A program made the translations under genes and the position numbers. A model generated the notes under the pieces. It was not told the DNA's origin. It did no database searches and saw nothing but the letters and a program-made list of their open reading frames with translations. DNA of 64,000 bases from Macrostomum lignano (Eukaryota): positions 1-64,000 of the forward strand of contig NIVC01002546.1 of assembly GCA_002269645.1 (NCBI GenBank), given 5' to 3'. Below are positions 22,497 to 61,869 of this stretch, piece by piece; the first letter of the stretch is position 1, and every line of letters starts with the position of its first letter.

Positions 22497-24893
22497 ATGA
22501 GTTCGTCGTCGGAAAGTCTGTCCTCTGGGTCGTCGGAAAGTCTGTCCTCTGGGTCGTCGGAAAGTCTGTCCTCTGGGTCGTCATATGTCTCGATGTCGGT
22601 TGATTCAAGTACACATTCGATTGACACATCCATGGGTGAATACAGCGATTCGAGCTCTTCCGCTGCAATTCAAGCAAACGTCGGCGAGCAACCGACTATT
22701 GCAATTCCTGCTGATGACGAGAATGAAGTGCAGGCAGCTGGTCCATCTGATATCGAGCACCCTGAAATATTTTCTGCGGATGAGGATAGTAACCTTCTTT
22801 CTGTCTTTTGTATCCAAGGTATCTCTATGGAGGTCAAATGTGCCCTTCTAATGTTGTGGATGATCTTGTCGAACGTTTCCAAGAAAGCTGTTAAAAACAT
22901 GCTTCGCCTCATTTCCATTCTGTCTCCTCGCGCTGCTTTACCTACATCTTACAAAGCAATGGAAGCGGTTCTGCTTCGTTCATTCATTTTAAAACCGGAC
23001 TTCGTTGTGAAAGTTTGTTTAGCGTGTCTACTTATAAACTGTAGTGAACATCCAGTCGACTCTTTCGAGGGACTATGGCTCTTAAATGTAAACCATCAGG
23101 TGGAGCTTACAGTTGAAAGGCATTTAAATGATATTTTATCTTACCAGCGTGAGCTAAGGCGAGGATTTCAAACTGACATTCTGAACTCTGCTGTTAGCAA
23201 TGAACTAGAAACCGGCTCATCTCCTGACATTTTTCACTTGTATTTTCTTCTTTCGGCTGACGGAGCAAACTTCTTTAAAGTTTCTGAAATGTCTGTGTGG
23301 CCTTTCTGTGCACTGTGCCTCAATTTGCCTGTTAGATTACGCCAGAAGTTTGTCAACATTATCACAATCGCTTTGTTTACCAATCGAGGAAAGCCGAATT
23401 TTGAAAAGTTTTTGCCTACTATTTTAAATCGCTTGCCTTCGTGTGTAAAAGTAAGGAATGTGACGTTTTTTCTTCACTTCTCGTTTTTTACCTGCGATTT
23501 GCCCGCTTTATCTCACCTTTTTGGAATCAAGCAATTCAACGGACAATTTGCTTGTCCCAGATGCATCCTACCTGGCAAGTCTCTAAAGGTGTCAGAAAAA
23601 GGCCAAGTTCGTGTCTTCCCCGCTGTCCATGGAATTCCGCTTCGAACTAATGCCATGCATGCGCAGCATCTCACAGTTCTCAAGGCTCAAGGGCTTAAGG
23701 ATTATTTTGGAATCAAACGCGAAACTGCTCTTCTCAAAATCATTCGTTTTCCAGAAAATTTCATTGTTGATTCTATGCATTGTCTCTGGGAAGGTCAAGT
23801 AAAACACATTCTAGCCTTCTTGACTGATTCTAAGACTAAAAGCTGCAATCCCAATCATTACCGTGTGCTAGGCTCAGCATCTGTCAATGTAATCGACTCT
23901 CAGATTATGCAACTGAAACTTCCCCAAGGTATTAGCAATGTTCCTCCAATTAGTCAGCTCTCACTTTGGAAAGCGAAAACATACAAGATTTTTGCTCTGT
24001 ATCTGTTTCCATCAATTCTGCTTCCACGAATCGAAAATCCCGAACTTAGGGGCCTGCTCCTTCTTCTTAATTCTATTTATAACTTGCTGTACTCGCAAAA
24101 TTCTTGTGTTTCAACTTTAAAACGTCTGTGCAATATGTTTCTTAACCTGTGTCCTGAGTTTTTTGGCGAACGTGTTATGCTTCTTAATTTTCATCTTCTC
24201 TATCATCTACCCGACCAGTATGAACGATTTGGTCCTCTGTATTGTGCATCAATGTTTCCCTTTGAGTCAGCTATGCATGGCTTTAATATGCTTCATTTTG
24301 GCAGTCGATTTCATGGAAAGCAAATTTCCGAAAAGTTTTTCTGGCTAAAAGTGCTATTGTATTCACTGCAACCTGCTGCAGGCTCCAATCCCTCAATTTC
24401 TGATGCACTCCTTGTCATCGCTAAGCACTACTGCAATCCTCCTGAGCGCGAAAATCGAACTCTAGGCGCTTCTGGGGGTAAAATTTTAACAACCACTTCT
24501 GCGGATTGCACTTTAAAAACATGTAGTTCGTATGTCCTGGATGTATCAAATTCATATTTTGCTATTAATCATTTTGCCGATAGCAAAATCTTTGGCTCTT
24601 TTCTGACTCCACAATGTCGTTTAATCGACTTACTGTTCAATGCTGTTCCGGATTTTACCAATATTGGTGCTAGTGCATCTGAACAAGCAATCTTTCTTGC
24701 TTTTTTTACATCTGATGTTCCACTCCGAAATATGCTTATCTTTACGAGTCAGGAACCCACTCGGGAAAATTACAATTGCATACGTCTCACTGATGTGGCT
24801 GCGAGGTGCATTCGAGTCGATGTCAACTTTCCGAACTTGCCATCAGGCAGTTTTTGTCTGGTACCCCTGTTGGAAGAGTGTGAGCACGATTAG
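22497..24893 (+). CDS. CACTA/EnSpm (TNP2/TnpD-like) DDE transposase, 798 aa, intact ORF
   Basis: Motifs SADG..., SVWP..ALCLNLP..R, CDLPA......G..ACPRC, VDSMHCLWEG, NFHLLYHLPDQYERFGPL..SMFPFE. Ser-rich N-terminus encoded by a 24-bp triplication. Confidence 0.92.
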   Translation: MSSSSESLSSGSSESLSSGSSESLSSGSSYVSMSVDSSTHSIDTSMGEYSDSSSSAAIQANVGEQPTIAIPADDENEVQAAGPSDIEHPEIFSADEDSNLLSVFCIQGISMEVKCALLMLWMILSNVSKKAVKNMLRLISILSPRAALPTSYKAMEAVLLRSFILKPDFVVKVCLACLLINCSEHPVDSFEGLWLLNVNHQVELTVERHLNDILSYQRELRRGFQTDILNSAVSNELETGSSPDIFHLYFLLSADGANFFKVSEMSVWPFCALCLNLPVRLRQKFVNIITIALFTNRGKPNFEKFLPTILNRLPSCVKVRNVTFFLHFSFFTCDLPALSHLFGIKQFNGQFACPRCILPGKSLKVSEKGQVRVFPAVHGIPLRTNAMHAQHLTVLKAQGLKDYFGIKRETALLKIIRFPENFIVDSMHCLWEGQVKHILAFLTDSKTKSCNPNHYRVLGSASVNVIDSQIMQLKLPQGISNVPPISQLSLWKAKTYKIFALYLFPSILLPRIENPELRGLLLLLNSIYNLLYSQNSCVSTLKRLCNMFLNLCPEFFGERVMLLNFHLLYHLPDQYERFGPLYCASMFPFESAMHGFNMLHFGSRFHGKQISEKFFWLKVLLYSLQPAAGSNPSISDALLVIAKHYCNPPERENRTLGASGGKILTTTSADCTLKTCSSYVLDVSNSYFAINHFADSKIFGSFLTPQCRLIDLLFNAVPDFTNIGASASEQAIFLAFFTSDVPLRNMLIFTSQEPTRENYNCIRLTDVAARCIRVDVNFPNLPSGSFCLVPLLEECEHD

Positions 24894-32841: not shown

Positions 32842-35800
32842 TTAGGTTGCGATCTCATCCCCGACATCGGGGACGTGTTCATCCGTGCAATTATCCTCAG
32901 CGTCCACGTAGTTTAGAGAGGACTCGTCCTGGTCTATCTGGAGCTTGCGCATTATCGCCTGCATAAAGGTCGGAGTTTGTTGGGATTGGAATTTCTTGGA
33001 GATTACATGCGTAAATTATTTCCATAGATAGAGCTTTCTAGTTGGGCAATTTCTATGGGCATTGGTGCTGTTGGGTGGGTGACTTCTATAGGGAGTGGGT
33101 GCTGTGGGCTGGGTGGGTGACTTCTATGGGCAGTGGGTGCTGAGGGGTAGGTGACTTCAATGGGAAGCGGGTGCTGAGGGGTGGGTGACTTGTGTGTGTT
33201 TTTTGGGTGGCGGAAGCTTAGACTATACCCTTAGTTTTGTGAAAGAACATTCCCAAACTTACCCCTAGCATAGCTTCGATCTTCACAGTTTTTGACTTCA
33301 ACTCTTTCAGCTTGGTTTTCACCGTCACCATGGAGACGTCGGTGTCTTCCTGTTTCTTGTAGATTTTATCCCATTGATCCAGCTCGGGATCGAGAGCTCT
33401 GTTAAGCTGGTCTCGTGTGATCCAAATATTGTCGAACATCTTGGATATGAAGTAGGTTTTCTTGCTTCGATCCGGATTTGGATAATATATTTCGGATTTG
33501 ATGACGAACTTCCTGGTCAGCACCATCGGTAGGATAGCTTCCACATCAAGGGCCAACTCGACCTGTTATTGGCATGGATGCTCTTTTAGTCACTTGAAAA
33601 TTATTTTCTATATAAATTTTCTCTGCCGCTATGCTTTGCAATTTACGTACGTTACAAATCATACTGCTCATCTTTCCACGAAATCAGTTTTTTCATATTT
33701 CATATTTCATACAATCAGAATTTTCCGAGCAGCTGTCATTTCTATGGTAGAGGCAGTGGTTCTTACTGATCGGAGTATCTGCTCAGCCTTGGAGAGCTAT
33801 TATTTGTAGAAGCAAAGGGTTGTGGGCACCCTGGTGCACTTTAAGCGACATTGTCACACAACCGGCGAGAGGCATTACTGCCCATTCCGCCGACTCCCCT
33901 GAGCAGGCACACAAGCGCGCGGATACGTACGCAGTCATACACACAGGCACACACTCACACAAGAGTGTACAGCGGCCCTAACTTGATTGATCGTTAGGCA
34001 TGTACACTTCACTGTGCCTTGGGGGTTGACCTTCAAGAGCGTTTAATTGCACGAGCAGAGCGAAGCCGAGACTCCAATTTAGCTCCAGATTATTGCGACT
34101 GCACTTGGAATCGAGCCTGGGCTGCTGGCGCATCAGAGCGCCGCGCCAGATCACTGGGCTTCGCCCCCCCCCGCCCTGCCTCGGAGTAGCTCGCATTTGC
34201 TCTAGTGGTATAAAATCCTCGCAAGAAAATGCTCACGTGCAATTTCTTGGTTTGCACTTTACAGGCCTGTGCAAATCTTTGTGTGCGAGCATGTTGTACA
34301 GTTTGACGTCGCTACCAGCTACTGTAATTGATGCACATTTGAAATCATCACCGAATACTAACGATCGCTCACCTGCATTGCCATCCGGTTAAGCGAAGCC
34401 TGCTCCTGCACCGCTTTGATGTCGTCGACTGCGAGACCGACCAGCAGGTTCATGATGATGATGCTCATGATGGCCAGGAAAAAAACAAACACGGCGTAAG
34501 TAGCGGCATTGTAAAATATTTGCTGGCTCGCGTTCAGCTTGTTGTCAGGCTCGTACTGGTTGTCGAACGTGTCCGCGTACTCAAATTCGCCGATCATCAT
34601 GACGGTGGTCTTGAGAATTGTCTTCCCCAAATTGTCGAACCCAATCTGGTTCTGCATCAGCAGGTAGAATGCGATGCTGAACGATAATATGAACAAGAAA
34701 AAGACCAAAAAGAATCGAGAAAAGGTAAAGAAGATGTCCGTGAACATGACAACGTAGATGCCGAAGCGAGGCATCTTGCGGATGTACAGGACCAGGTTGA
34801 GCCAAGCAATCAGGATGCCCAGGGCTCCCGTGTTCCATTGCCAGTCCTGCAGAAGTAGAAAAGATTTTAATGTTTGATAGGAAAACTGCACATTTTTCCA
34901 CTAAATACTAATATGTTTAGTAGAGTTACATTTAAAGTTTTTTGTAACCAAAAAAAAAATCAAGCCAAGAGCGCACGTCTGCTTTTTCCACCCGTTTCAA
35001 CCTTTTCAAGGTGGCATATCAGGTTGTAGCCTAGTACTCGCAGTTAGAGCGTCGGACTCTCACGATTCAAAGTTGAGGGTTCGATTCTCGACCCACTCGG
35101 AAAATCTGTCCCTGAGCTGCAAGCCGCTTAACTCTGCATTGCTTCAGTTCACCCAGCTGTAAAATGGGTGCCAGCATTAGCTGGGGTAATTGAGGGTGGG
35201 TGTGGCGACCCCCCTCCCAGTCCTTGGACTAAACAGCCGTACGCAGCCTTCAGATATGGCTGAGCTGTTGGTTGCACATCTGCCCATTACGGTATTAGGG
35301 CAGGTGTAATAAAGAGGAGGCAAAAATACCAAGCGTTTAAATATTTGCATCGGCTGAGCCTGATTAGCGACTTTTTTAATCATGTGTGTGAATAGCCTTC
35401 GTAACGTTCAACAATCTAATTTGGAATTTTGTTCCAATACTTGACCGCGCAGCCCTGTTGATTTTCACGTTCTTTGACTCTATTTAGAAAGTGGAAAACT
35501 CCTTTCTGGTGAACTTGGTAACTCTATATTCTCCAATTTCAATAACACCACTCAAAAACTATGTTCAGTGTATGCATGCTGTAACTTACAGTTCGAACGC
35601 CGCAGGTCCTCTGACAATCGCTCAGATCAATCACCGTGACAATGGCCAAACTGAAGATGCTCCAGTCCATCAGATTCTCCATGTTTATGTACTTCAGCCG
35701 GCTTATAAATACCTGGCTCACCTGTTTAATGTTTTAATTGTTAATTTCGATTCAATGCTAAAATTCATACGGAAACCGAATCCTAGATTTGGTCCTTGGT

Positions 35801-38800
35801 CTACCATTGGTGTACGAACCTCTTTGAGCAGAAACAAGCCTCCCAACCCGATCACAAGCCACATAGCCACAAAAGCCACTGCTGGCTTCGAACAGCTGGA
35901 CATTGCCTTCAACACCTGGTCGCATTCGTTCCCGCTCCACGGACTGACGTTGTAGGCCGAATAGAACGGTCCGTAGTACATGTAAGTCGGCTTCAGCACC
36001 AGCATGTAGGCGGTGAAAGCGGCGAGAAAGATGGCGTACAGTGACAGGTTGATGTAGTACACCCAGCGACCGTAGGAGGTCCACTTGTGACGCAGCAGAG
36101 CCGATACTAGCGGGTGCTTCAACAGAGTCTCGCGCTTCTTCCTGTTGATTACAAAAGAAAAATACGATGTGGTCACTAAATATATGGTCACTGAAAGCTT
36201 GCAAGACTTCTCTATGTTTCTCACTTGACCATCAGCATCAGTGGATGGTTCTTCTTCAACGAGCCTTTAACCGAACGAAACTTCAGATCCTTGCGCAGGT
36301 AGCCCTCTGTGTCGTAGATGTCTATATTCTGACTCAGTGCATCGCCGACCGTTGAGGCGCTGTCGGAGCCTCCACCGCCGCCACTACCGACACTGCCTCC
36401 GCCGTTGCTGCCCCCATCCATCTGGTCAAATCCGAGAGCTGCGGCGTCTTTGCTGCGCAGCGGAGCCCAGCTGCTGTACATGTCGTCCAGGAACTCGTAG
36501 TAGAACACAACCTTGTAGTTAGGGTCGTCCGGCGGTCGGCGCTGCTTGTTGTTCTCAACGCAGCGGTTAAAGACCTTCTCGGCCACTGCTGGCATCTTGC
36601 GGATGAGCTTCCTGAGCGGCGTGTCCTTCTCGCCCTTCTCGCCGATTGTCTCGTTGCGCAGAGCCTCCTTCCATTGGTTGGAGTTGATCAGCGTCAGGGC
36701 GACCTTCTTGTGCCCGTGATCGATCGCGGCGTCCAAGCAGTTGCAGTTGTGCAGCGGACTCTTGATGTTGGAGTACTTGATGCGGTTGTCCACCTGGTGG
36801 TTTAGTTTTGACTTTATTTTGTTAATGAAGAATAAAGACGAATTTAAGATTCTAAAGTTGGTGTTTGTTCTGGAATATTGATATAAAATGAAAGAGAATC
36901 ATGGCAATGAGCTAGGTGAATGGCTATTACTCTCGTATATCTGCTAGCAATGAATGTGTCGTATATTTGTTTTTTACACTCTGATGACTGCAGACGGCCT
37001 GGGAAGAAGTCTTATTTGCTAGACCTAAAGTTGGCATCCAATGCGTAGAGAGCCTCACCCTGGCACCGATTTTCAGCAGCAGCTCAACCATCTCCTGGTG
37101 CCCACCCTGACAGGCGAGGAAAAGCGGGGTGATGTTCGACTTGTCCGCCGGATCGATTGGCGAGTCGTTCTCCAACAGCACCTGGGCCACCTTGGTGAAG
37201 CCCTTGGACGCGGCGCAGTCCATCGCAGTCCAGCCGCGCGAGTTCCTGGCCTCAACGTCGGCTTTGCCCTCTTCGATGAGCACTTGGCAGATCTTGGAGT
37301 GGCCAGCCAGTGCCGCCAGGTGCAGCGGCGTGTTCGAATCTTCGTCCTCGTCGTGCGCCAGGTTGCGGCTGAGGCGTAGCAGGTGACGGACGATGGGCAC
37401 GTGGCCGGCTTTGGCGGCCAGATGAATTGGCGTCTCTTCGTCCTCGTTTTTGTCATCGTATTTGGCCTTGTAGCGCAGTAACAGCTCGACTACGTCAAGA
37501 TAGCCTGCGATTGTTTAGTAACACTCGTAGCTTTTCATTAGGCATTTGATCGCAAAGTTCAAATACTAGAGCGATTGTTGACTGTAAAAAACAAACCAAT
37601 CAAACGTAAGAGTACATTTACGCTCGTACAAGGTTAAAATACGCGTAGCGCAGACAGGTGGATAATTTCTAAAAGCAGTACATGCTTCGATTATCACGTA
37701 TAGTGCAATCTGCTTTTAAATTAACCATGAACTAAGGAATGGATCTCGATCAGTTTCCCGTCCGCTAATTGAATTGATTGTGCCAATGAAGAAAGATACG
37801 AAGACAATAATATACACTCGTACAAAGCTCCTATCAATGTAGCTCCAATTGCGCATTGATTCATCAATGGCTATTTACGAGCTAGTCAATCAAAAGTAAA
37901 TAGTCTTAAACAGCTATCTTATTAGCAGGTCGATGGCGTTCAATAAAATGAAGCATAGTAAGGCAAATTGCAGCGGCCTACCATTCTCGCAGGCAACGTG
38001 CAACGGCGTATTGTTGTTGACATCCGCTTCGTCAATGACGCGATTCTCAGTGACCACCGGATTGTCCAATAGAGCTTTAAGCACTTTGGTGTTGTGCCAC
38101 TGGGCTGCCAGGTACAGGGCGGATCGATCCTGGCCGTCCGTGCACAGCGGATTGGCTCCTTTCTCCAGCAGGATCTGGACGCATCCGGGATCGTCCTGCT
38201 GGCAGCTGGCCAGAAGGAGGGGTGTGTTCTCCTCCCTATCTTTGGCGTCGATCACGGAGCTGTCAATTTCCAGCAGGTACTTCAGCAGGTCATTCTGATT
38301 GAAGTTCGCCGCCTTGTGCAACGCCGTCTGTCGATCGGTGTCCAAAGCGTTTAGGCTGGCGCCGTGACGGATGAGCAGCTCAACCATGGCCGTGCTGCCA
38401 GTGCGAGCAGCGAGATGCAGCGGCGTCTCATGACCCGTGTTGCAAGCGTTCACGAAGGCACCTGAATGTCATTTTTGTAGTGATGAGATTTCATTTTTCG
38501 ATTTTATGCTGAACAGTAGAGGTTTTGCTTTTTCAATGCTTACCCTTCTTGAGCAGGACCTCCGCAACAACGATGCATTCATTCTGCACCGCGCTGTGCA
38601 GACAGGTGTTGTTTTCCATATCCTTGCGGTTGATGTACCGCTTCAGGAAGCCTTCGCCTTCGAGCTCGGCGGAGTGCAGCAAGTAGCTGCAGATTTCTTC
38701 GTTACCTTCGGCACTGGCCAGGTGAAGAGCGGTGCAGCCGCTGTTCTCCACCATGTCTAGGTAGTCTTTGTCGTTCGTCTCCATCTCGAGGAGCATCTTC

Positions 38801-41800
38801 ACAATGAGAACTTCGCTGTGTGCGCAGGCTAAATGAAGAGCTGTCATGTCTTCGTTGTCGGTTATCTGTGACGCGAGGGAAATATAAAAGTTCAAGTCAC
38901 ATATGAGAAAAAGTCTATAGGAGATTGCCTGCAAAATATTATCAAGATTAGGATGTGGTTCGTACAATGATATCTACGTTCTAAAGCATTAAACGTGTGA
39001 CGTCCAAGGTCACAGGTGTGGTCCAAGCTAAGTAGAAAAAACCTGTTTGACAAGCAGTAAAAACGAAAGTATAATTCACTTTTGGGCATTTTGAGATGTT
39101 AACAACCGACCCGACCAAACCGCTACTTAGAACTGTCGACCAGAAGCCAGGGAGGGAGCCCGAGAGAGGGACCCGAATGCAGTCCGAAGCTTTACCCCCG
39201 GGTTCGATTTCATCGTCGCTTTATTTGACGCCGTGGAAAAGGTCGATGAGATCTTATAGTCAACTAAGATTTTGTCATTGTACTCAGTGTGCTAGGTAAT
39301 TTTTACAGTTCCTGGGGGAAACTCCGGAAAAAAACTATGGGAAGATTTGGTCGCATAGGAAACGCGCTCACCCTCCAGATGGGCACTCGAGTGCTGTAGA
39401 CGCATTCCACCCTGTCGGCGCTGATCACTCGTCCTTTCTGTCGCATCGACTCAAAGTGCAGTAGGCACCTGCTGGCCACGAGGTTGCCCTTCATAGCGGC
39501 GTAGTGCAAAGGTGTGCAACCGTAGAAATCTTTTTGAGTAAAATCGGCTCCATGTCTCAGCAGGATGTAGACCGCGTCCCGTTCGTCCTACGATGAAAAG
39601 TAGGGCCCAGCTAGATACAGCAACAGTTTGGCAAAGTTTCACATTAACTTAAAAATGATCCGTGCATTAACTTTATTACCGACTTTATCAAAGGCTGACA
39701 CCGAAGCTTAAACAGCAAAATCAGTTTTTGATCATGAAAAGCACCATTTTTTGGATTTTATCGTGCACCTAATCATAATGCTGTTAAACTTTTCCACTAA
39801 TTTTTAACGCGTTCCTTTGCAACTAAGAGTGCAATATCCTAAAAGTAGCCATAGCCGTTAGTGTTATCATGTTGAGAGATACCATGCAATATCAAGACAA
39901 TAGATAGTTTATTCATTTCAATACCGCAAATTTAAGATAAGCATATTTAAACAAAGTTGCTCGAGGCAGTGTGATTATGTATTACTGCAGTTACCATGCG
40001 TCAGGCGAATTTTTGTTTACTTTACTTCCATGTTTCGAATACACACGAAACATAGAAGCCGGAGGATGAGCATCACTACGGCTCGTATAGCGCATGAATG
40101 ACTTCACAGTTATGAAACATTCGCTACACTGGGATCAGAGCACTTACATCGCTTTCGGAATCGTATTCGGCGTTCGATTCCAAAACTGCTAAATACTGCC
40201 AAATGGAACAGTAGATGTTTGCAAAGGTAATTGAATATTATGGATAGTGTGGAAGAGAAGCTAGCAAGGAAGGTTTTTTACATGTAGTAGCAGGTCATCG
40301 GGCATTGTAATCAGGCAACATGTTGATGTATATATGCGTTATGCGTTATGCGTTATACATCCATTCACATATATTGTATCTATCGGTCTTGTCTTTCTGT
40401 CTACGTGTCTTATGTCTGTCTGTCTGTCTTTGAATCTTTTCGATTAGAGACAGGGGCTGTGTGCACTCAGGTGCACTTTAAGCGACATTGTCACATAACC
40501 GGCGAGAGGCATTGCTGCCCATTCTGCCGACTCCCCTGAGCAGGCACACAAGCGCGCGGATACGTACGCAGTCATACGCACAGGCACACACTCACACAGG
40601 AGTGTACAGCGGCCCTAACTTGATTAATCGTTAGGCATGTACACCTCACTGTGCCTTGGGGGGTTGGCTCTCAAGGCTGTTAATTGCACGAGAAGAGCCA
40701 AGCCAAGATTCCAATTTAGCCTCAAATTAATGTGACTGCACTTGGAATCGAACCTGGGCTGCTGGCACACCAGAGCGCCGCGCTGGACCACTGTACTACG
40801 GCCCTCGTCTTAGGTTTGGATCTGTCGGTCTCTCTGTCTTATTATCTTAAAGTGTCTGTCTGTCTGTGTGTCTTTAAGTCTGTCGGTCGCTCTGCTTTAT
40901 TATCTTAGTGTCTCTCTGCCATATGCCTGTATATCAGTAAATTAACGACAGCTATTACATAAAGTAACATCTAGGAAAAACTTTAAAGGAAAATCGGTAA
41001 AGAATATAATTCACGTTCAGATCAAGTCAATTAACGATGGATTATAAGTGCATCGTATCGACTTTTGAGGAAACAAAAGACATCAAGCAGTGAAATCGGG
41101 TTCAACCAAAACAGAAGACATCGACTCAGCTTACCTGCGGCTTCAACGCAAGACTCTCCGACTCGTCTTCATTCTTCTAAAACGACAAGGTAAGGAGAGT
41201 AGGCTTTGTAAGCTTTAAAAAGCAGCAGTTCAACATTGTACAAAGCGACTGCGTGAACAAAAAACTATAGAATTAAAAATATGTGATAAACTGCAAGTAC
41301 TTTGCCTATCAGCAAAGCGGGGGCACAAGTCGAACGCATTAAAGTTTACAACTCAAGGGATTCGTAAGCAACAATAATTGTTAATCATACAAACAACAAC
41401 AAAAACTTTATAAAACGGTATTTTAGGTCTAAACTGGACTGTATTTTGTATTGCTTGTATTTTTTTCAACTGCTGAACATTGGACCTTGTTCTGCTCACG
41501 GATTCAAATAGTTAGGATGGGCTAAATAAAGAATCAATTTAGTTATTTTAGTATCAATACATTGCAGCAGAGCCAGTCAAAAGCCGGTTACATTTTAGTT
41601 GATCGTCACAAAAGGTCATCGCGGTATAACAAAAAACGTCCAAACAACTACAACAAAAGCTTACAGGTAGACATAGCATAAAATTGTAAATTGACTTTAT
41701 ACCAGTTTTGCATTGGTCGATGCCTCAGCCTGTCTCGTACGCTGTTGAGTGTGAAGTTTTTGTTTTAATGATGAACCAAATATTTAACCTTCAATTAACA

Positions 41801-44800
41801 AGTAAAATAGTTAAAGTAAAGTTCTTTCTGTGCATTTGCCTGTAGGTTGTACGTTTTCTTAGAGTTGAAGCACAGTAATTAAAATTTGAAGGTTGATTGA
41901 CAGTTTTCACAACAGTACATTAAGAGAAGCACATCGAATATAGTTACACCTTAGTATGTAGAGTTAACAGAGTTATTAATTTTTATACTGCAAGATAATT
42001 CAAATTTGATTCAGATACCTCATCATCCCTGTCAATTGACGTCTGTTAAAGTTTTGTACAGTTTTCTCGTGTCCAAAAAAACTTTCAAATTGTTATAGAT
42101 ACGTAAAAAAGTCGAAGAATGAATGAATAGATAGTGAAAAGCACCCAAGAAAAGGCAACAAATTTATTACGAGCTAAATATCCTTCTATTGACTGTGGAA
42201 ATTTATCCGACAAATTTTATATAACGATGACCCAAACCCATTCATGTATATAGGCCAATTGCTGGCTTTTAGTATTTTTCTGGGGTCTGTCATCATTTCC
42301 CTCATCGGGTCTGTCATCGGGTCTCTCATCGGGTCCATAATCGGGTCCATTTCCCAAGGGTCCATCATCGGGTGCATCATCGGTTCTCTCATCGGGTCTC
42401 TCATCGGGTCTCTCATCGGGTCTCTCATCGGGTCTCTCATCGGGTCTCTCATCGGGTCTGTCATCGGGTCTCTCATCGGGTCTCTCATCGGGTCTCTCAT
42501 CGGGTTTCTCATCGGGTCTCTCATCGGGTCTCTCATCGGGTCTCTCATCGGGTCTCTCATCGGTCTCTCATCGGGTCTCTCATCGGGTCTCTCATCGGGT
42601 CTCTCATCGGGTCTCTCATCGGGTCTCTCATCGGTCTCTCATCGGGTCTGTCATCGGTTCTCTCATCGGTTCTCTCATCGGTTTTCTCATCGGGTCTCTC
42701 ATCGGTCTCTCATCGGGTCTGTCATCGGGTCTCTCATCGGTATCTCATCGGTTCTCTCATCGGGTCCATCATCGGGTCCATCATCGGGTCTCTCATCGGG
42801 ACTCTCATCGGGTCTCTCATCGGGACTCTCATCGGGTCTCTCATTGGTCTCTCATCGGGTCTCTCATCGGGTCTCTCATCGGGTCTCTCATCGGTTCTCT
42901 CATCGGGTCCATCATGGGGTCCATCATCGGGTCTCTCATAGGGTCTCTCATCGGTTCTCTCATCGGTTCTCTCATCGGGTCTCTCATCGGTTCTCTCATC
43001 GGGTCTCTCATCGGGTCTCTCATCGGGTCTCTCATCGGGTCTCTCATCGGTTCTCTCATCGGGTCCATCATGGGGTCCATCATCGGGTCTCTCATAGGGT
43101 CTCTCATCGGTTCTCTCATTGGTCTCTCATCGGGTCTCTCATCGGGTCTCTCATCGGGTCTCTCATCGGTTCCATCATCGGGTCCATCATCGGGTCTCTC
43201 ATCGGGTCCATCATGGGGTCCATCATCGGGTCTCTCATCGGTTCTCTCATCGGTCTCTCATCGGGTCTCTCATCGGGTCCATCATCGGGTCTCTCATAGG
43301 GTCTTTCAACGAATATCAAGGCCTCTAGTTGAAATTCTTAATATCATTAATTGTTGAAAATTCAAATCTAGATAGAGAAAAGAAATCCAAGATGAAATCC
43401 GACTCAAAAACAGGTCAGTAGGAGAGGAAAAAAGCTTCAATTTCATCCAAGCATTTCTCACAGCTGTGCGAGCTCTGCCTCGCAGTGACACGTTATGAAT
43501 GGGCGGCAAATTTGTAAAAGCTCCGCCTTTACCGGCGGTGCCAATGTCAGCGGCGGCTGTCACAGCGTCTGCACTTCCAGATTGCTTCAGTTTCTATTTA
43601 TTTTATTAGGCGAAATAATTGAAGTAAATTTAATGTCATTTGGTAGTCTTTCCCTAGTTATATTGATCTCCTGTGACGCGTTATAGCTAGAATCGAGAAA
43701 AGTGACACAATGGGTTGTATGCAGAAAGCTCTGTCTAGGGTAGTCCGGTCTTGAAAAGCTAGTCTGGACTTGGATTTGGTATGCGGAAACACAAAGGGCC
43801 GTATGCAGAAAGCTCTGTCTAGGGTAGTCCGGTCTTGAAAAGCTAGTCTGGACTTGGATTTGGTATGCGGAAACACAAAGGGCCGTATGCAGAAAGCTCT
43901 GTCTAGGGTAGTCCGGTCTTGAAAAGCTAGTCTGGACTTGGATTTGGTATGCGGAAACACAAAGGGCCGTATGCAGAAAGCTCTGTCTAGGGTAGTCCGG
44001 TCTTGAAAAGCTAGTCTGGACTTGGATTTGGTATGCGGAAACACAAAGGGCCGTATGCAGAAAGCTCTGTCTAGGGTAGTCCGGTCTTGAAAAGCTAGTC
44101 TGGACTTGAATTTGGTATGCAGAAACACAAAGTTAGGCCGGTCTACTATAGACACAACTAAGGTAGCTGGACCATAGACCATAGACTGAACTACCTTGTC
44201 AAGTGTGCCGTGTAGTGATTGGCTGGGACTTGAGATATCTGTTCGCTCTAACTCTCCATCATATGCCCTACCCACACAGTCAGCATCCCAAGCTAGTTAG
44301 TTGACATCAAAGGCAACAAAATACACCGCGCCTCCTTCTTTGTTAGTTTCTAGGTGAACGAAAGGCCGATTGCGTTTGGATTCAACGAGACACTTATGCG
44401 CCTATTAGTGCATATTCTTTACTGTCAAAAAGTTCACTACTGGTTGGCATAGCTAGTCCTACTCAGTAGCAGCGCTCTTAGCGTGAGCAGACTGATTTTT
44501 TGATTGCCAACATTCTCTGCTAATGTCAGAGTTTTCCCAGTAAGCAAATGGAGAAGAGACAGGGGCAGTTGAGCGAGGGTGAGGGCGAGAGCGAGAGCGA
44601 GAGGGGGAGACAGCTCGCAATATTATTAAGCTTCTGCTGCTGCAGGCTCTAAAACCTCACGAGGGTTGCTATGGAAACAGCAAGGTACACACAGCTGGAA
44701 TTGGGAATAGAAAATACCAAACGGTGGACATTGCTTGCTGCTGGGGCCAGGTTTCCGGAGGTTTGGCATTTCATTGTTTAGACAGCCAGTGCTTTAGCGT

Positions 44801-50627: not shown

Positions 50628-51836
50628 TTAACGTCTGCAAGACCGGAGCTGCATCTGGTAGACCGAGCTCGCGTCATCAAAGTTGCTTGCTAGCACCATC
50701 TTCCTGTCGTTCACAACAACATCGGCGGCGTCTACTGCTGCGGCTGCGGTTGGCGGCGCCGATCTGGTCGAGGCCGACTGCTCACCCCGGCGACACCAGA
50801 CCCGGCGACGGCACCGGCCGCACAAAAGTCTGGCCAAGTCGGCGCGAAAGTCGGCGGACATCAGACTGTAAATAAAGAAGTTGCAGGCGAAGTTGCAGAA
50901 CTGCAGGAACAGAAGGCCGGACCAGCCCAGCCGGACACTGTGGTACTCGGGCGTGCCCGGCTGGACGGAGCCCGGAATGCCCTTGCCGTGGTGCACAACT
51001 AGCCAGAACTTCACGGGCATCGCCAGCGGGATGAACAACAGCGGCACAGGCAGCACCATTCGCGTGGTTGGCGTGAGCAGGCGATGCTGCCGTCCAGCTG
51101 GCGAGCAGTTGCTGAGCCCGGCTGTCAGAGTTTTAAGCTGGCGACTTCTTTGGTAAAGTCTGTGCGCGATCGCCCCAGTGAAGATGACCAATAGCAGGAG
51201 GGGCAGCCCAGCGGTGAAGGTCATGTCTACGAAGGGGTGAACCGATTTAGAAATGAACGCGTCCAGACCCGAACGCGCATTCTGACAGCTCATTCGGTTC
51301 AGTTGGTGGTTCCAGACGAATTCGCGAGTCCAAAAGAAATGCACATTGAGCAGTGCAGAGACAGTTATGATAGCAACAATCACAGCGACGATTCGACGCG
51401 GCGTCAGGAGTCGCGATCGACGCAAGGGGAAACAGATGATGGTGAATCTCTCTCCGGACACCAGCACCACCATCCAGATGCTGAACATCAACGAGAAGTA
51501 GACGAGAAACTCGTGCGTCTTGCAGACACCTGTGCCCAAAGTTTGCACGTCAAAGCTGATGTAGAGCTTGGCGTGTCTCAGCCAGTGCCGCGTGATGGGG
51601 AACAGGAACACGAGCAGATCGGCGCAGGCCAGCGTCACCATGGTGATGCAGAGGACCGGCTTCCTTCGCCGTCGTTTGGTACTAGTACTGAACACAAGCA
51701 CAATTAGCAAGTTGCCTATCAGGCCAACGGCTAAGAGTGGCGGAAGCAGAACGCTCCACAAAATTGTATTCGCCTGACAATAGGCCTCGCAAACGGACGA
51801 TTCCGACTCGGAGTCGTTCGCGACTTTCAGTGACAT
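50628..51836 (-). CDS. Intronless class A (rhodopsin-family) GPCR, peptide-receptor-like (FMRFamide/orphan type)
   Basis: Seven hydrophobic segments: TM1 GLIGN, TM2 LACADL, TM3 C...ERF..ICFP, TM5 P..LL, TM7 NFACNFFIY. Likely start MSLKVANDS at 51836 (N-glycosylation sequon); alternative in-frame ATG at 51929. Confidence 0.9.
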   Translation of the reverse strand: MSLKVANDSESESSVCEAYCQANTILWSVLLPPLLAVGLIGNLLIVLVFSTSTKRRRRKPVLCITMVTLACADLLVFLFPITRHWLRHAKLYISFDVQTLGTGVCKTHEFLVYFSLMFSIWMVVLVSGERFTIICFPLRRSRLLTPRRIVAVIVAIITVSALLNVHFFWTREFVWNHQLNRMSCQNARSGLDAFISKSVHPFVDMTFTAGLPLLLLVIFTGAIAHRLYQRSRQLKTLTAGLSNCSPAGRQHRLLTPTTRMVLPVPLLFIPLAMPVKFWLVVHHGKGIPGSVQPGTPEYHSVRLGWSGLLFLQFCNFACNFFIYSLMSADFRADLARLLCGRCRRRVWCRRGEQSASTRSAPPTAAAAVDAADVVVNDRKMVLASNFDDASSVYQMQLRSCRR

Positions 51837-52548
51837 TTCTAAGAAATTCCTTTCCTTCAATTTTCCGCCTAACTTGGAGTGCGCGCTTGAGATGCTGCTG
51901 GCAACTCTTATAAAGACAGATACCCACATAATAGCCTCGGTACGAAGCCTATTGCGCCATGTCTGTCTCGTCGCTTTTGATTGGACGTTGGAAATTAAAG
52001 CGTTTGAACTCACTGTGAAACTATTTGTGGCAAAATATTCGACCCTCGAATTGTTTTATTTAAAGGAATGGCATTAAACTGAATAGGAAATTGCGTCGTA
52101 GATTGAATAAAATCGATAATAGATGTAGGTTTAAAATCGATGCAAAATCAACTATTTCATGGATAGGCACAACGATTTTTACGGGTTAAAAAATAGGTTA
52201 GGATTTTTTTAAAGAAGGTAATGTCATTTTTTAGTTTTTGGAAAGTGCCCGTAAGTTATCTGTTCAATATGGAAGCAAATTTATACTTTTAGAACAAAAT
52301 GTGAGAGAAGAATTGCCTAATTTTTTATTCTAACAGAATTTATTAAACCAATATAAAAAAGTACAATTTAAAATACTGCTTCAGCAAAGGGATTAAGGAC
52401 AGTAAGCAGTTAAATAGGCATTGAGCTGCTTGCTAATGGTTTGTTCTTGTTCAGTGACCAATGGCTCTACTAGAAGAACAACGTTGCTCGATTTTTCTGT
52501 ACTTAAAGATAAATAAACAGTGTCACATACTGAACTTTAAAGTTTAGA

Positions 52549-54596: not shown

Positions 54597-57807
<3,211 letters not shown>

Positions 57808-58777: not shown

Positions 58778-60988
58778 ATGAACGAATCAACGAACAAGGC
58801 CCTATTGGTTCCAGGCACGGCAGCCCTGGAACCGGGCATTCAGGAGGTCTACAACCAGCTGGAGAAGCGAATCCAAAGTGGCAAACCTTTGCAGCAATTC
58901 CAGCAGGACGATTGGCGCAATCTCGTCCGGGTGGCGCAGCTACACACGTCAGCGCTAAATCAGACGCCGACTGACGAAAGGCGTGCGTTCGCCAAGGCGA
59001 TTCGCCAGCGCTCGGGCTGGTGGGGCCGTCCGTCCGAGGCCAAGATAGCCGATGCCAATCTGGAGCGCACGTTGATTCGATCGGCTCTTGATTCGGCCGG
59101 ACTATCGGAAGCGGCTACGGAGGCAAAGCGACGCCTTCACGGACCGGGTGTTTTCGCTTTGCGTCATGCTCGGCTGCCGGCATTTGCCTACGTCGGTCGC
59201 GACGCGAACCAACTTATTGAGGCGCTGCGGCGTCTCCTCTGGCTGGCTTTCGACGGACTTGAGAGCCCGAGTAGCGATCAAAGACGACTTGACGAATCTG
59301 ATGCAGTGGTCAGTGCAGCGATTCTGTTGACTCGTCAGACCGATTGGCAGCTGACTCTCGTGGCAGCTGACGACTCTGAGGCGGAGCGACAGACTTTGCA
59401 GAATGAACTGACGCTTCGTCTAGGTTGCCTATGGCCTCGTGGTCTGAACTCGAGTCTGAATCAGAGCCTTGTCTGTTTGAAGGAGCTACGGGAGCTTGAC
59501 TGGTGCCGATCCATAGAGAACGGCGCGAGTCGAAGTCACTTAGCTGTTGTCGAGGAGGCTGCAACGGCGATGGAAGCTAGACGATTGGGTCTTGCCGATC
59601 TGCAGTTTGACGACGTGCGTCGGATTGCCTTTGAGGCGGACGAGTCAGGCCTGTACCGGTGCGATGAGGCTGTTCGCGAGTTTAGCCGGCTTTGCCAGCA
59701 GCTGCGACAGCGTAGCAGCGAGTTACACCAGGCTGACTACGTCGCTTGCCATCGCCTCCATGTCATGGCCGCTGAGTTGGCCGCAAAGCCGCAAACCAAA
59801 GAAAGACTGAAGTACCGACGAGACGTGCGACAACATAGTGGCTGGTGGCGCTCGGAGACGGGTGGGCTGGAATTTTTTGACGACTCTGTAGCAAACTTGG
59901 ATTGCCTGGCAAATACCCTGGCGAGAATTCTACAGTCGGAAATGAGCAAGTCGGAAAGCGGTTGTAATGACATGAGCAACTATTCCCAGCTGCAGACTGC
60001 CGGTGTATTTGTGCTCAGACACAGGTAGAATGGCTCATTTCTTGAATTCATACCTTACAGCATCCATGTTGACTAGTTTGACAAAAGAATAGCCTACTTT
60101 CAATACTGGTAGCAAGATCTAACTTTTAAGTAGTCCTCTTTAAGATTTTTCTGCTTAAATCGCTTCGTTTCCCGTCAGTAGTACATTTTTATTTATTGCA
60201 TATAAATTTCTGTAGCGGAAAAAATGGTAGCCTTGCTTTCTACATTTAGCTTTATTATTAGACCGTAAAATGATCTAGTCAGCTTCACTCAGCCTGACTA
60301 GCATAATGCTTATAACAGGGACTACTCAATACGATCGCGACTGGAAAGGACAATATTTGGAGGCCGCTCGATTAATAACTTAGTCCTCTAAAAGCATTAC
60401 TTCGATATGTTCTCCCTTGTAGTCAGCGAGTTTGTGACTGTGGTAAAAACCTAATCCAAGCGATGCTTTTTCGAGGACTAAGTTATTAACAGATCGGCCT
60501 CCAAATATTGTCGTTTCCCGTCCCGAGTACTGAGTAGTCCCTGGCTTATAAATAGTTTATCGATTGTACTACCAACTCGTCGCGACAGGTCCAGACGTTG
60601 TTGGCGCTACGTCAGTCGTCCATGCGACGATGTACTCGCAGAATTTCGCTGCCTTCTTCACCGATCGCTGGACGGATTTCCATCTGACGAGAATTGTGAC
60701 AACGCTAGTTCAGGGTGCGACCCGACAGGCCTGGATTGCGCTGCTGCCGCAATGCTTTTGCTAAGCACAGCAGACGAATGGCTGTTTGAATTGCATCCCG
60801 AGCCTGACCAGCTGCTAGCGGCCGAGCTGTACAATAGGTTGGTGCTGCAGCTCGACGCTCTGTGGCCAGGTGGTGCCAATCTGTCTCTGCTCATTGACTG
60901 GCAGACGCTGCCAGCGCTGCACGAGGCGATGGCTCAGCGTCCGCAGTCACAGCTTCAGGCGCGAAACGCCAATGTCACCTGCGATTGA
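58778..60988 (+). CDS. Uncharacterised ~548-aa protein with two internally duplicated GIY-YIG-like modules
   Basis: Exons 58778-60024 and 60589-60988 (AG|GT donor, CAG|G acceptor) join in frame and give a gapless alignment of repeat 1 (GVFALRHARLPAFAYVGR...LWPRGLN) with repeat 2 (GVFVLRHRSRRCWRYVSR...LWPGGAN). Each module is preceded by an R..F/Y...IRQ.SGWW segment. A further upstream exon at 58400-58592 is possible. Confidence 0.75.
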
Positions 60989-61869
60989 GACTGCTATGCT
61001 AAGTTAGATTATTCTCCTACTATCAAACTTATCATATGTTTGCATGGGAACTTTCTACTAATTATAATTGTAACTAATTTATTAGTTTAGTTGCAGGGTT
61101 CTGTCTGCTTCAAGAAATTCTATTAAAGTCTTTTGTCACCAATAAAACCATAGTAGAAAATAAAAAGAACTAAAATACGAGCTTATCTATTTGCTTTGCT
61201 CGCAGTCTACAGAAACTACTTTATTGATGCGTGGGCCTTCAGTCAATTAAGCAGATGAGGTTTTTATAGACTAGACAGCCAAATACTAAATGGAAATGCA
61301 CTCTCCAAATACGAACTATTTTATTGACTGCAGTTTGTAGTAGCGGATATTCATTCGTTTTTCTGCAGCGACGTTCTCAGAATTATTTTACGGGAACACT
61401 GGGTAAACGATTTGTTGCTCAAAGCTGATTCACAAAGCGTCAAAAGTCTTACAATTAACTAGAACTTGCATTGAATTTGCCTATCCCATTTTACTACATC
61501 GTTTTAGATGTAAAAATAGAAACGATTTTTTGTGTCCACAGGACTGATTCTAGCTCTTGGCTAGTCTTTGTAAAAATGGGACCGGAATGGTTTCCCGAGC
61601 TAATCCCAACGGTAATCGATAGAGATGCAGCAATTTATAATGTAGCTTGCAGCAACAATCAGTGATTTTTCGGTTCATTAATGGATTCCGGTTGGATAAG
61701 TCAATAATTGTCAGTTTTTTAGCTCTCCATTCACTGTCAGCTGCTATATAGTCTGAATTCTTTATAACCGAACGAACAAAATTTTCAGGTCAAGTTGCTC
61801 AAGTTTTTGTTCATAACGCTTTCTACTAAACTGTAAATCAAAAACTCAATCTTAAACGATAAAAATCAA

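What the first reader, a model, noticed from the sequence alone, without database searches (positions are those of the whole stretch)
58778..60988. Orphan host-like gene encoding a tandem pair of degenerate GIY-YIG nuclease folds
The spliced ~548-aa protein has an A-B-A-B design. Module B reads GVF-x11-YVG (aa 124-140) ... AAILL...DW.L.L ... L.LRL..LWPRGLN in copy 1 and GVF-x11-YVS ... LWPGGAN in copy 2. This matches the GIY-x10/11-YIG hairpin, the central helix-strand and the C-terminal P.G.N motif of I-TevI- and Penelope-type GIY-YIG endonucleases. The first Tyr is Phe in both copies, the helix-1 Arg is absent at its usual position, and the metal-binding Glu position (12 residues before the Pro) is Gln or Tyr, so both copies look catalytically dead. 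Module A is a helical segment with a conserved IRQ.SGWW. There is an intron and no RT, TIR or TSD. Together this suggests a domesticated pseudo-nuclease, perhaps a nucleic-acid sensor or structure-specific binder in genome defence. I know of no described family with this architecture.
Basis: partly seen in the sequence, partly recalled or inferred. Interest (0 to 1): 0.78.

Follow-up and report, generated by a model that had tools for sequence, protein, structure and literature searches.

The report
Tandem GIY-YIG-fold protein gene, flatworm
This Macrostomum lignano (flatworm) gene encodes two tandem copies of a helical module joined to a domain with the GIY-YIG nuclease fold; it is not an orphan, because uncharacterised relatives exist in annelids and a nemertean, and the usual catalytic residues are poorly conserved.

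Summary
Exons 58778-60024 and 60589-60988 (GT..AG intron) give a 548-aa protein. Its two halves are homologous (27% identity, E=1e-13). The window is Macrostomum lignano.

"Orphan" is wrong. A full HMMER scan found relatives in Tubulanus (nemertean), Owenia, Helobdella and Lamellibrachia (annelids) and in unnamed eukaryotic contigs. All are uncharacterised, with one or two units. The four whose loci I read are single-exon genes.

No Pfam, PHROGs or PDB sequence match exists. With a 13-unit alignment, AlphaFold2 gives a confident unit model (pLDDT 85, pTM 0.82): four helices, then beta-beta-alpha-alpha-beta-alpha. Foldseek's top PDB hits are the UvrC GIY-YIG domain. In the viral library every top hit that carries a name, bar one terminase at rank 50, is a GIY-YIG or intron endonuclease. 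A profile comparison aligns the GIY...YIG hairpin and helix 1 (0 of 150 shuffles reach the score).

The classical catalytic residues are not conserved across the family, so a non-canonical or inactive nuclease is most likely. dN/dS among the three M. lignano copies is about 0.2.

Verdict: a new, undescribed branch of a known superfamily. Function is untested. Interest is moderate.

The parts
58778..60024 (+). Exon 1 (ATG at 58778; aa 1-415 plus 2 nt of codon 416)
   Evidence: ORF and splice reconstruction. Identical N-terminus in P0001.
60025..60588 (+). Intron, GT..AG, 564 nt. It interrupts the beta1-beta2 hairpin of the second GIY-YIG-like domain. The homologues whose loci were read (Tubulanus, Owenia, two unnamed) have no intron.
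   Evidence: (P0002 junction).
60589..60988 (+). Exon 2 (third base of codon 416 to the TGA stop). AATAAA signals at 61141 and 61159.
58880..59137 (+). Unit 1, module A (aa 35-120): four helices with the family-invariant S-G-W-W loop (aa 79-82).
   Evidence: AF2 helices at unit positions 9-27, 31-45, 58-73 and 79-86. Invariant S45, W47, W48.
59138..59467 (+). Unit 1, module B (aa 121-230), GIY-YIG fold: beta1 124-130 (GVFALRH), beta2 137-142 (FAYVGR), alpha1 146-159, alpha2 173-183, beta3 190-196, alpha3 201-214 (N209-E210), WPRGLN 219-224.
59705..59989 (+). Unit 2, module A (aa 310-404), with SGWW at aa 354-357.
   Evidence: Internal repeat alignment. Unit alignment A1.
59990..60901 (+). Unit 2, module B (aa 405-520; coding parts 59990-60024 and 60589-60901, split by the intron): GVFVLRH…RYVS…, N-R in place of N-D/E, WPGGAN 508-513.
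60316..60543 (.). Foldback (MITE-like) inverted repeat inside the intron. Arms about 60316-60406 and 60454-60543. Partial extra copies of arm sequence lie at 60131-60207.
   Evidence: Present in the introns of the paralogous loci L001 and L002.

Best explanation
The locus is an intact, single-intron nuclear gene of Macrostomum lignano. It belongs to a small, so far undescribed protein family found in spiralian animals (flatworm, annelids, nemertean).

Family members have one or two units of roughly 220 aa as delimited here (module A probably starts a little further upstream). Each unit is an N-terminal four-helix module with an invariant SGWW loop, packed onto a domain with the GIY-YIG nuclease fold (beta1-beta2-alpha1-alpha2-beta3-alpha3, ending in an invariant W-P-x-G-x-N). 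The window protein has two units, made by an internal duplication that is shared with the nemertean and Owenia proteins.

Shown: the gene model, the duplication, the homologues, the fold, and purifying selection.

Inferred: the residues that GIY-YIG nucleases use for catalysis are not the ones this family conserves.
- The GIY tyrosine is Phe in 8 of 13 units.
- The YIG tyrosine is variable.
- The helix-1 Arg is present in only 7 of 13 units and is displaced by two residues.
- The metal-binding Glu is apparently replaced by an invariant Asn with a neighbouring Asp or Glu.

The protein therefore most likely does not cut by the canonical one-metal GIY-YIG mechanism. It more probably uses the old nuclease cleft, remodelled by the SGWW module, as a nucleic-acid-binding surface, and the two units may act as an intramolecular pseudo-dimer. 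In the window protein, copy 2 (F411, Y-N-R) is the more degenerate. Copy 1 keeps Y138, R151, N209-E210 and N224.
For: Gene model and splice junction: with the RNA-seq basis of the GenBank models (PMC5730564).

Internal duplication: E=1e-13.

Homologues: found and named (Tubulanus XP_074643470, Owenia CAH1783701, Helobdella XP_009020121, Lamellibrachia KAI0211080). They are single-exon genes; the Tubulanus, Owenia and P0007 genes have recognisable host genes on one or both sides, while the short contig carrying P0003 has only unannotated neighbours.

Alignment: unit alignment A1 has invariant S45, W47, W48, G90, H96, W156, N175, W185, P186, G188 and N190.

Structure: AF2 with A1 gives pLDDT 85.1 and pTM 0.82, with strands 90-96, 103-108 and 156-162.
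- Foldseek against the PDB: ranks 1-3 are the T. maritima UvrC GIY-YIG domain (prob 0.77-0.91, target-normalised TM 0.55-0.61). Hpy188I and PD-T4-3 also appear lower in the list.
- Foldseek against BFVD: the top 50 hits have prob 0.82-1.00. About half carry a name, and all of those except one terminase large subunit (rank 50) and two 'uncharacterized' giant-virus proteins are GIY-YIG, intron-associated, Seg or 'endonuclease' entries. Best E=5e-4.

Profile comparison: hhalign of module B against a 9-sequence GIY-YIG alignment scores 24.5. Column shuffles give 9.7±1.8 with a maximum of 17.8.

Catalytic-position table. hhalign register of the Arg.

Selection: dN/dS is 0.20-0.24 among the three M. 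lignano copies, with a synonymous excess at P=9e-4 to 4e-5.

Synteny: a GPCR gene lies upstream in all three copies.
Against: - Foldseek E-values against the PDB are only 0.15-0.3. The structural case rests on rank, probability and the coherence of the hits.
- The AF2 alignment is shallow: 13 units from 9 proteins.
- I could not inspect coordinates, so the mapping of Arg, Glu and Asn equivalents comes from sequence and helix register, not from superposition.
- The C-terminal half aligns unreliably in hhalign.
- An Arg two residues from the canonical column and an N-D/E pair in alpha3 could still form a working active site.
- No binding or cleavage data exist, and I found no expression data for this gene.
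- Two of the three M. lignano copies carry lesions: a 19-bp frameshift in L002, and loss of the last 22 nt of exon 1 in L001. Constraint in this recently duplicated genome may therefore be relaxing.
Confidence: 0.6

Rival explanations
1. It is an active endonuclease with a variant GIY-YIG active site. Candidates for that site are Tyr138, or Tyr92 in homologues, the displaced Arg151, the N209-E210 pair as metal ligands, and possibly the invariant His130. Unit 2 in other phyla, or unit 1 in M. lignano, would be the catalytic unit and the other a pseudo-domain partner.
For: The Arg column is Arg in all u2-type units of the two-unit proteins and in both window units. D/E176 is present in 11 of 13 units next to invariant N175. 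N190 is invariant. The u2-type units are the most GIY-YIG-like by hhalign. By helix register, R117 is the sixth residue of alpha1, as R27 is in I-TevI (plus established knowledge of the I-TevI structure). Motif variability within the superfamily is documented (PMC1564403).
Against: The Arg is absent in 6 of 13 units (Q, S or A), including all three annelid single-unit proteins in A1. The GIY Tyr is Phe in 8 of 13 units, and the YIG Tyr is L, V or I in 3. hhalign places the Arg two residues off the catalytic column in two independent runs. Window unit 2 has no carboxylate at any of the three candidate positions (Y-N-R).
Confidence: 0.25
2. In M. lignano the locus is a decaying remnant with no present function. 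It would be either a fragment of a mobile element (a Penelope-type or homing-endonuclease gene) or a redundant post-duplication copy drifting to pseudogene.
For: Two of the three copies have disruptive lesions. The structural neighbours are mobile-element endonucleases. The homologues whose loci I read are intronless and the phyletic distribution looks patchy. A LINE fragment lies 970 bp upstream.
Against: The window copy is fully intact over 548 codons. dN/dS is about 0.2 with a significant synonymous excess. There is one copy per duplicated locus with conserved synteny. The gene is conserved across three phyla. The LINE is on the opposite strand, has its own 13-bp target-site duplication and is absent from paralogous locus L001. 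The GenBank gene models exclude repeat-overlapping transcripts. There is no RT, transposase or NUMOD domain.
Confidence: 0.08
3. The resemblance to GIY-YIG is convergent or a modelling artefact, and module B is an unrelated small alpha/beta domain.
For: No Pfam, PHROGs or PDB sequence hit even at E<=10. PDB Foldseek E-values exceed 0.1. The MSA is shallow.
Against: Sequence-profile and structure evidence agree independently. hhalign aligns exactly the GIY…YIG hairpin and helix 1, about 8 SD above shuffles. The AF2 model used no templates, and the only coherent group it retrieves in two libraries is GIY-YIG proteins. The order and spacing of all motifs (GxY/F, x10-11, YVG, helix, beta3, helix, PxxN) match.
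Confidence: 0.07

Closest known systems
GIY-YIG homing endonucleases (I-TevI catalytic domain; phage Seg and intron-associated endonucleases)
   Same: About 100-aa beta-beta-alpha-alpha-beta-alpha domain. G-[VI]-[YF]-x10-11-Y-V-G hairpin. C-terminal P-x-(x)-x-N motif. Best Foldseek matches in the viral library. Profile-level similarity over the hairpin and helix 1.
   Different: No NUMOD or HTH DNA-binding tail. A nuclear animal gene, not in an intron, phage or organelle. The Arg27 and Glu75 equivalents are not conserved. Carries an N-terminal SGWW helical module and a tandem duplication. Not detected by Pfam PF01541.
UvrC N-terminal GIY-YIG domain (PDB 1YD2, 1YD3, 1YD4)
   Same: Top three PDB structural matches, with target-normalised TM 0.55-0.61 over 114 columns.
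   Different: 18% identity. No UvrB-binding, EndoV or HhH domains. The residues equivalent to the catalytic Y19, Y29, R39 and E76 are variable in this family.
Penelope-like element GIY-YIG endonuclease
   Same: A eukaryotic GIY-YIG lineage.
   Different: No reverse transcriptase is linked to the gene. The only RT nearby belongs to an unrelated LINE insertion on the other strand. The gene is single-copy and syntenic. A direct sequence comparison with PLE endonuclease domains was not done.
Eukaryotic cellular GIY-YIG nucleases SLX1 and ANKLE1 (COG3680)
   Same: Host-encoded animal proteins with a GIY-YIG domain.
   Different: No RING/PHD finger (SLX1) and no ankyrin or LEM domains (ANKLE1). No entry described as SLX1 is in the top 50 PDB hits. 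Restricted to spiralians in the searches done.

Membership tests
GIY-YIG superfamily (fold level) | About 100-aa domain with a three-stranded antiparallel sheet encased in helices (PMC11893778) | tested here: met
   The AF2 model has strands 90-96, 103-108 and 156-162 with helices 112-125, 139-149 and 167-180, at pLDDT 91-96 in these elements. Foldseek retrieves GIY-YIG domains first in both the PDB and BFVD.
GIY-YIG superfamily | 'GIY' and 'YIG' boxes on beta1 and beta2, 10-11 residues apart | tested here: met
   GVF-x11-YVG (aa 124-140) and GVF-x11-YVS (aa 409-425). The Gly is invariant, the aromatic is Y or F, and the Val is near-invariant across 13 units. hhalign aligns these boxes to those of I-TevI, UvrC and the phage endonucleases.
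GIY-YIG superfamily | Conserved catalytic Arg in helix 1 (I-TevI R27, UvrC R39) | tested here: inconclusive
   The column aligned to R27 is A, E, S or T. An R/Q column lies two residues downstream, with Arg in 7 of 13 units including both window units. No 3D superposition was possible.
GIY-YIG superfamily | Metal-binding Glu in helix 3 (I-TevI E75, UvrC E76) | tested here: inconclusive
   Invariant Asn (N175 in unit numbering; N209 in the protein) is followed by D or E in 11 of 13 units. Window unit 1 has N-E and unit 2 has N-R. The hhalign alignment of this half is unreliable.
GIY-YIG superfamily | C-terminal Asn motif (motif E, I-TevI N90) | tested here: met
   W-P-x-G-x-N is invariant in all 13 units. 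The motif can be absent in some families (PMC1564403).
GIY-YIG superfamily | Sequence match to the curated family models (Pfam PF01541 and relatives) | tested here: not met
   No GIY-YIG-clan hit at E<=10 for the whole protein, for separate modules, or for any of the 13 units. No PDB sequence hit.
GIY-YIG superfamily | Metal-dependent endonuclease activity | not testable with these tools
   Needs biochemistry.
Penelope-like element endonuclease | GIY-YIG domain fused C-terminally to a PLE reverse transcriptase; multicopy element | tested here: not met
   No RT in the protein. One copy in the window. The nearby RT and RNase H ORFs are on the minus strand, within a 3.2-kb insertion with a 13-bp TSD that is absent from L001.
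I-TevI-type homing endonuclease | GIY-YIG domain plus NUMOD or HTH DNA-binding domains; encoded in introns or free-standing in phage or organelle genomes | tested here: not met
   No such domains. It is a nuclear gene, with recognisable host genes next to it in four species.
SLX1 / ANKLE1 | C-terminal RING/PHD finger (SLX1), or N-terminal ankyrin plus LEM (ANKLE1) | tested here: not met
   Pfam finds none of these domains.

The most novel reading that the evidence does not exclude
This is a spiralian-wide, previously unrecognised family of domesticated GIY-YIG pseudo-nucleases. A new SGWW helical module has taken the place of the usual DNA-binding domains. Tandem units form an intramolecular pseudo-dimer that recognises, but does not cut, a particular nucleic-acid structure. 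It would be a new animal nucleic-acid reader derived from a selfish-element nuclease.
Probability: 0.3. Interest if true: 0.65.

Novelty: new variant of a known kind. Interest (0 to 1): 0.5.

Why it matters
The list of GIY-YIG lineages given in PMC11893778 is short, and from general knowledge the animal ones are SLX1, ANKLE1 and the Penelope element nuclease. This would add a further animal lineage. It is invisible to Pfam-level annotation, appears limited to spiralians in the searches done, and has an unusual build: a helical SGWW module plus the GIY-YIG fold, often in tandem. Its conservation pattern suggests a change of function.

It gives a fold assignment to 'uncharacterised' proteins in model annelids and flatworms. 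M. lignano is amenable to transgenesis (PMC5730564) and, from general knowledge, to RNAi, so the function is directly testable. The case also shows that a shallow alignment that counts internal repeats as extra rows can rescue structure prediction for lineage-restricted genes.

Tried and rejected
- Single-sequence AF2 of the full protein gave pLDDT 37.6 and was unusable.
- Pfam was run on the whole protein, on four separate modules and on all 13 units. PHROGs was run on the 13 units. PDB sequence searches used both the single protein and the profile. No GIY-YIG hit appeared.
- Weak hits were rejected as noise. Terminase_7 (E 0.003-0.03, below cutoff) matched only 1 of 13 units. The RlmL_1st and volvatoxin A2 hits are also weak.
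- The word-indexed profile search added only two partial homologues.
- Global or greedy hhalign over the C-terminal half gave low-confidence registers. I did not use it to assign the Glu.
- A search for expression data or mentions of Mlig022171, Mlig028671 or the homologue accessions, in papers and in the supplements of three M. lignano papers, found nothing.
- 'Part of the adjacent LINE' was rejected on strand, TSD and absence from the paralogous locus.
- An introner or MITE origin of the intron was considered. ACAG|GT is repeated at both splice sites and there is a foldback element inside. The inverted repeat does not reach the intron ends, so this stays unresolved.
Full report
**1. What is in the sequence**

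The region 58778-60988 carries a 416-codon ORF that stops just inside a GT..AG intron.
- Joining 58778-60024 to 60589-60988 keeps the frame and gives a 548-aa protein.
- The protein matches two Macrostomum lignano hypothetical proteins at 97% identity: P0001 (BOX15_Mlig022171g1) and P0002 (BOX15_Mlig028671g1). The window is therefore M. lignano.
- P0002 contains exactly the predicted junction, …GVFVLRHR|SRRCWRYVS….
- The GenBank models of that assembly come from a genome-guided RNA-seq transcriptome from which repeat-overlapping transcripts were removed (PMC5730564). The paralogous copies are therefore transcript-supported. This particular copy was not tested.
- The CDS has GC 0.57, like the neighbouring GPCR ORF (0.56). 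Intron and flanks are 0.36-0.40.

**2. The A-B-A-B design is real**

BLASTP of aa 1-245 against aa 246-548 aligns aa 40-227 with aa 310-516: 27% identity over 203 columns, E=1e-13. The gene occurs once in the 64-kb window.

**3. It is not an orphan**

An exhaustive phmmer scan of 1.84 billion representatives found eight distant relatives (E 3e-28 to 7e-4, 26-35% identity).

Named sources:
- Tubulanus polymorphus, a nemertean.
- Owenia fusiformis, Helobdella robusta and Lamellibrachia satsuma, all annelids.
- All are 'uncharacterized' or 'hypothetical'.

Unnamed sources:
- The others come from unnamed metagenome or SRA assemblies.
- One lies beside TOP3B and furin-like genes, so it is an animal genome.

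Architecture and gene structure:
- Three relatives have two units like the window protein, a fourth (P0006) has the end of a first unit plus a complete second one, and the others have one unit plus long low-complexity tails.
- The Tubulanus, Owenia, P0007 and P0003 genes are each a single exon. The first three have recognisable host genes on one or both sides.
- No paper in the held library mentions any of these accessions.

**4. Family anatomy**

I cut 13 units and aligned them as A1.
- Invariant positions, in unit numbering (add 34 for the window protein): S45, W47, W48 (the SGWW loop), G90, H96, W156, N175, W185, P186, G188 and N190.
- Family consensus: …SGWWG…PG[VI][FY]xFxH[KR]xxPxF[RQ][YF]V…[ND][IV]L…[RQ]…LLxS/TxxxDWxFxF…N[DE]xxLxH[DN][ST]LWPxGxN…RxSCxxHxWPP.
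- The last motif has decayed in both window units.

**5. Fold**

The single-sequence AF2 model failed (pLDDT 37.6). With alignment A1, the model of window unit 1 (aa 35-256) is confident: mean pLDDT 85.1 and pTM 0.82.
- It has four helices (module A).
- These are followed by strand 90-96, strand 103-108, helix 112-125, helix 139-149, strand 156-162 and helix 167-180 (module B).
- That is the beta-beta-alpha-alpha-beta-alpha order of GIY-YIG domains. PMC11893778 describes the fold as three antiparallel strands encased in helices. The order of elements is from established knowledge of the I-TevI structure.

Foldseek against the PDB:
- Ranks 1-3 are the T. maritima UvrC GIY-YIG domain (1yd3, 1yd2, 1yd4): prob 0.77-0.91, TM normalised to the 90-residue target 0.55-0.61, 114 columns.
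- Two other GIY-YIG enzymes, Hpy188I and PD-T4-3, appear lower.
- Everything else is scattered noise with prob below 0.1.
- The E-values (0.15-0.3) are not significant on their own.

Foldseek against BFVD is clearer:
- The top 50 hits have prob 0.82-1.00, most of them at least 0.96.
- About half carry a name. Those are GIY-YIG, intron-associated, Seg or 'endonuclease' proteins, except one terminase large subunit (rank 50) and two 'uncharacterized' giant-virus proteins.
- The best E-value is 5e-4.

**6. Independent sequence-profile test**

I built a 9-sequence GIY-YIG alignment.
- E. coli UvrC came.
- Seven diverse phage endonucleases came and were aligned.

hhalign of module B against this alignment gives a local alignment of 43 columns.
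- It covers exactly the GIY strand, the YIG strand and helix 1.
- The score is 24.5 and P=8e-4.
- 150 column-shuffled controls score 9.7±1.8 with a maximum of 17.8, and the reversed alignment scores 15.6.
- Module A gives nothing.
- Pfam, PHROGs and PDB sequence searches see no GIY-YIG relationship at E<=10. The family lies beyond HMM-to-sequence reach.

**7. Catalytic residues**

The roles of I-TevI Y6, Y17, R27, E75 and N90, and of UvrC Y19, Y29, R39, E76 and N88, are established knowledge of these enzymes. Motif variability across the superfamily is documented in PMC1564403. Counts across the 13 units are.

| Position | State across the 13 units |
|---|---|
| GIY aromatic | Y in 5, F in 8; F in both window units |
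| YIG aromatic | Y in 6, F in 4, L/V/I in 3; Y in both window units |
| Column aligned to R27 | Never Arg |
| R/Q column two residues downstream | R in 7 (both window units and all second units), Q in 3, S/A in 3 |
| Helix 3 | Invariant Asn followed by D/E in 11; window unit 1 = N-E, unit 2 = N-R |
| WPxGxN | The Asn is invariant |

- By hydrophobic register, N-D-L-I-L-K lines up with E-x-x-Y-I-K of UvrC. The invariant Asn may therefore sit where the metal-binding Glu does. This is an inference, because hhalign is unreliable there.
- Net: the residues under strongest constraint are structural (G, W, P, G, N and the SGWW loop), not the canonical catalytic set.
- I therefore favour a non-canonical or inactive nuclease fold used for binding, at confidence about 0.6 for the whole statement and about 0.9 for the fold. 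A variant active site is the main rival, at about 0.25.

**8. Host gene, not transposon**

Three M. lignano copies exist: the window, L001 and L002. They are 96-99% identical.
- All three have the same GPCR gene upstream on the minus strand.
- Between the GPCR and the gene, the window alone has a 3.2-kb insertion at 54597-57807. It encodes RT and RNase H on the minus strand and is flanked by a 13-bp duplication, GGTTGCAATGGTA. It is an independent, 5'-truncated LINE and is not part of the gene.
- Nei-Gojobori dN/dS among the copies is 0.20, 0.23 and 0.24. Synonymous:nonsynonymous counts are 11:7, 19:14 and 14:11, against an expected ratio of about 1:3.2 (P=9e-4 to 4e-5).

Caveats:
- L002 has a 19-bp frameshifting deletion at window positions 59073-59091.
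- L001 has lost the last 22 nt of exon 1, which encode the GVFVLRH strand of unit 2, and the 5' part of the intron. These are replaced by an inverted duplicate of the start of exon 2. This may be an assembly artefact.
- The window copy is the only fully intact one of the three.

**9. Comparison with known families**

The protein works like, and very probably descends from, the GIY-YIG superfamily.
- It meets the fold, the GIY/YIG boxes and the Asn motif.
- The Arg and Glu features are inconclusive.
- It fails curated sequence-model membership.
- It is not a Penelope endonuclease (no linked RT), not an I-TevI-type homing endonuclease (no NUMOD or HTH, nuclear host gene), and not SLX1 or ANKLE1 (no RING, ankyrin or LEM).
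- PMC1564403 lists the domain architectures it found in the superfamily. As far as I can tell from its figure legend and table, and from the searches here, neither a tandem pair of GIY-YIG folds nor the SGWW helical module is among them.
- I classify it as a new variant (family) of a known kind.

**10. Verdict**

Its fold call is borne out by tests it could not run. 'Orphan' is wrong. 'Catalytically dead' is plausible but unproven. A genome-defence or sensor role is speculation. Interest is moderate (0.5).

Noticed in passing
window 54597-57807 (minus strand): A 5'-truncated non-LTR retrotransposon insertion. It carries an RT ORF (55839-56969) and an RNase H ORF (54690-55820), and is flanked by a 13-bp target-site duplication, GGTTGCAATGGTA. 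It is absent from the paralogous locus L001, so it is a recent, copy-specific insertion about 970 bp upstream of the gene.
   Followed up: yes
window 60025-60588 (intron), especially 60316-60543 and 60131-60207: The intron holds a roughly 230-bp foldback (MITE-like) inverted repeat plus partial extra copies of arm sequence. The hexamer ACAG|GT is repeated at both splice junctions. The four non-flatworm homologues whose loci were read are intronless. This hints at intron gain linked to a transposon insertion, but the inverted repeat does not reach the intron ends.
   Followed up: partly
L001 11225-11568 and L002 around 9683 (paralogous M. lignano loci): L001 lacks the last 22 nt of exon 1 and has an inverted duplicate of the start of exon 2 inside the intron. 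This is either real or a long-read palindrome artefact. L002 has a 19-bp frameshift deletion in unit 1. The window also has a 12-bp in-frame insertion (60717-60728, the CDPTG loop) relative to both.
   Followed up: partly
window 50628-52013 (minus strand): An intact 461-aa rhodopsin-family GPCR ORF (Pfam 7tm_1, E=3e-20). It is syntenic with the target gene in all three M. lignano copies.
   Followed up: partly
window 42244-43299 (+) and 43658-44275 (-): A 351-aa ORF with strong glycine-zipper hits (Gly-zipper_Omp, E=3e-22; YMGG-like; Rick_17kDa_Anti), which are domains typical of bacterial outer-membrane lipoproteins. Next to it is an ORF with an MSP-domain fragment. This is odd for a flatworm locus and may be low-complexity Gly-rich sequence.
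   Followed up: no
window 22497-24893 (+); 19160-19837 (-); about 34300-39000 (-): A 798-aa ORF with a DUF1258 domain (E=8e-14), a mariner/Mos1-type transposase remnant (HTH_48 plus a partial DDE), and exons of an ankyrin-repeat gene. L002 shows a 1404-aa ankyrin protein in the same relative position.
   Followed up: no
L013 7344-8987: In an unnamed animal assembly (SRR23372228), the single-unit homologue P0007 lies head-to-head with topoisomerase III-beta exons, about 400 bp apart. A shared promoter with a DNA or RNA topoisomerase would fit a nucleic-acid role, but it may be coincidence.
   Followed up: no
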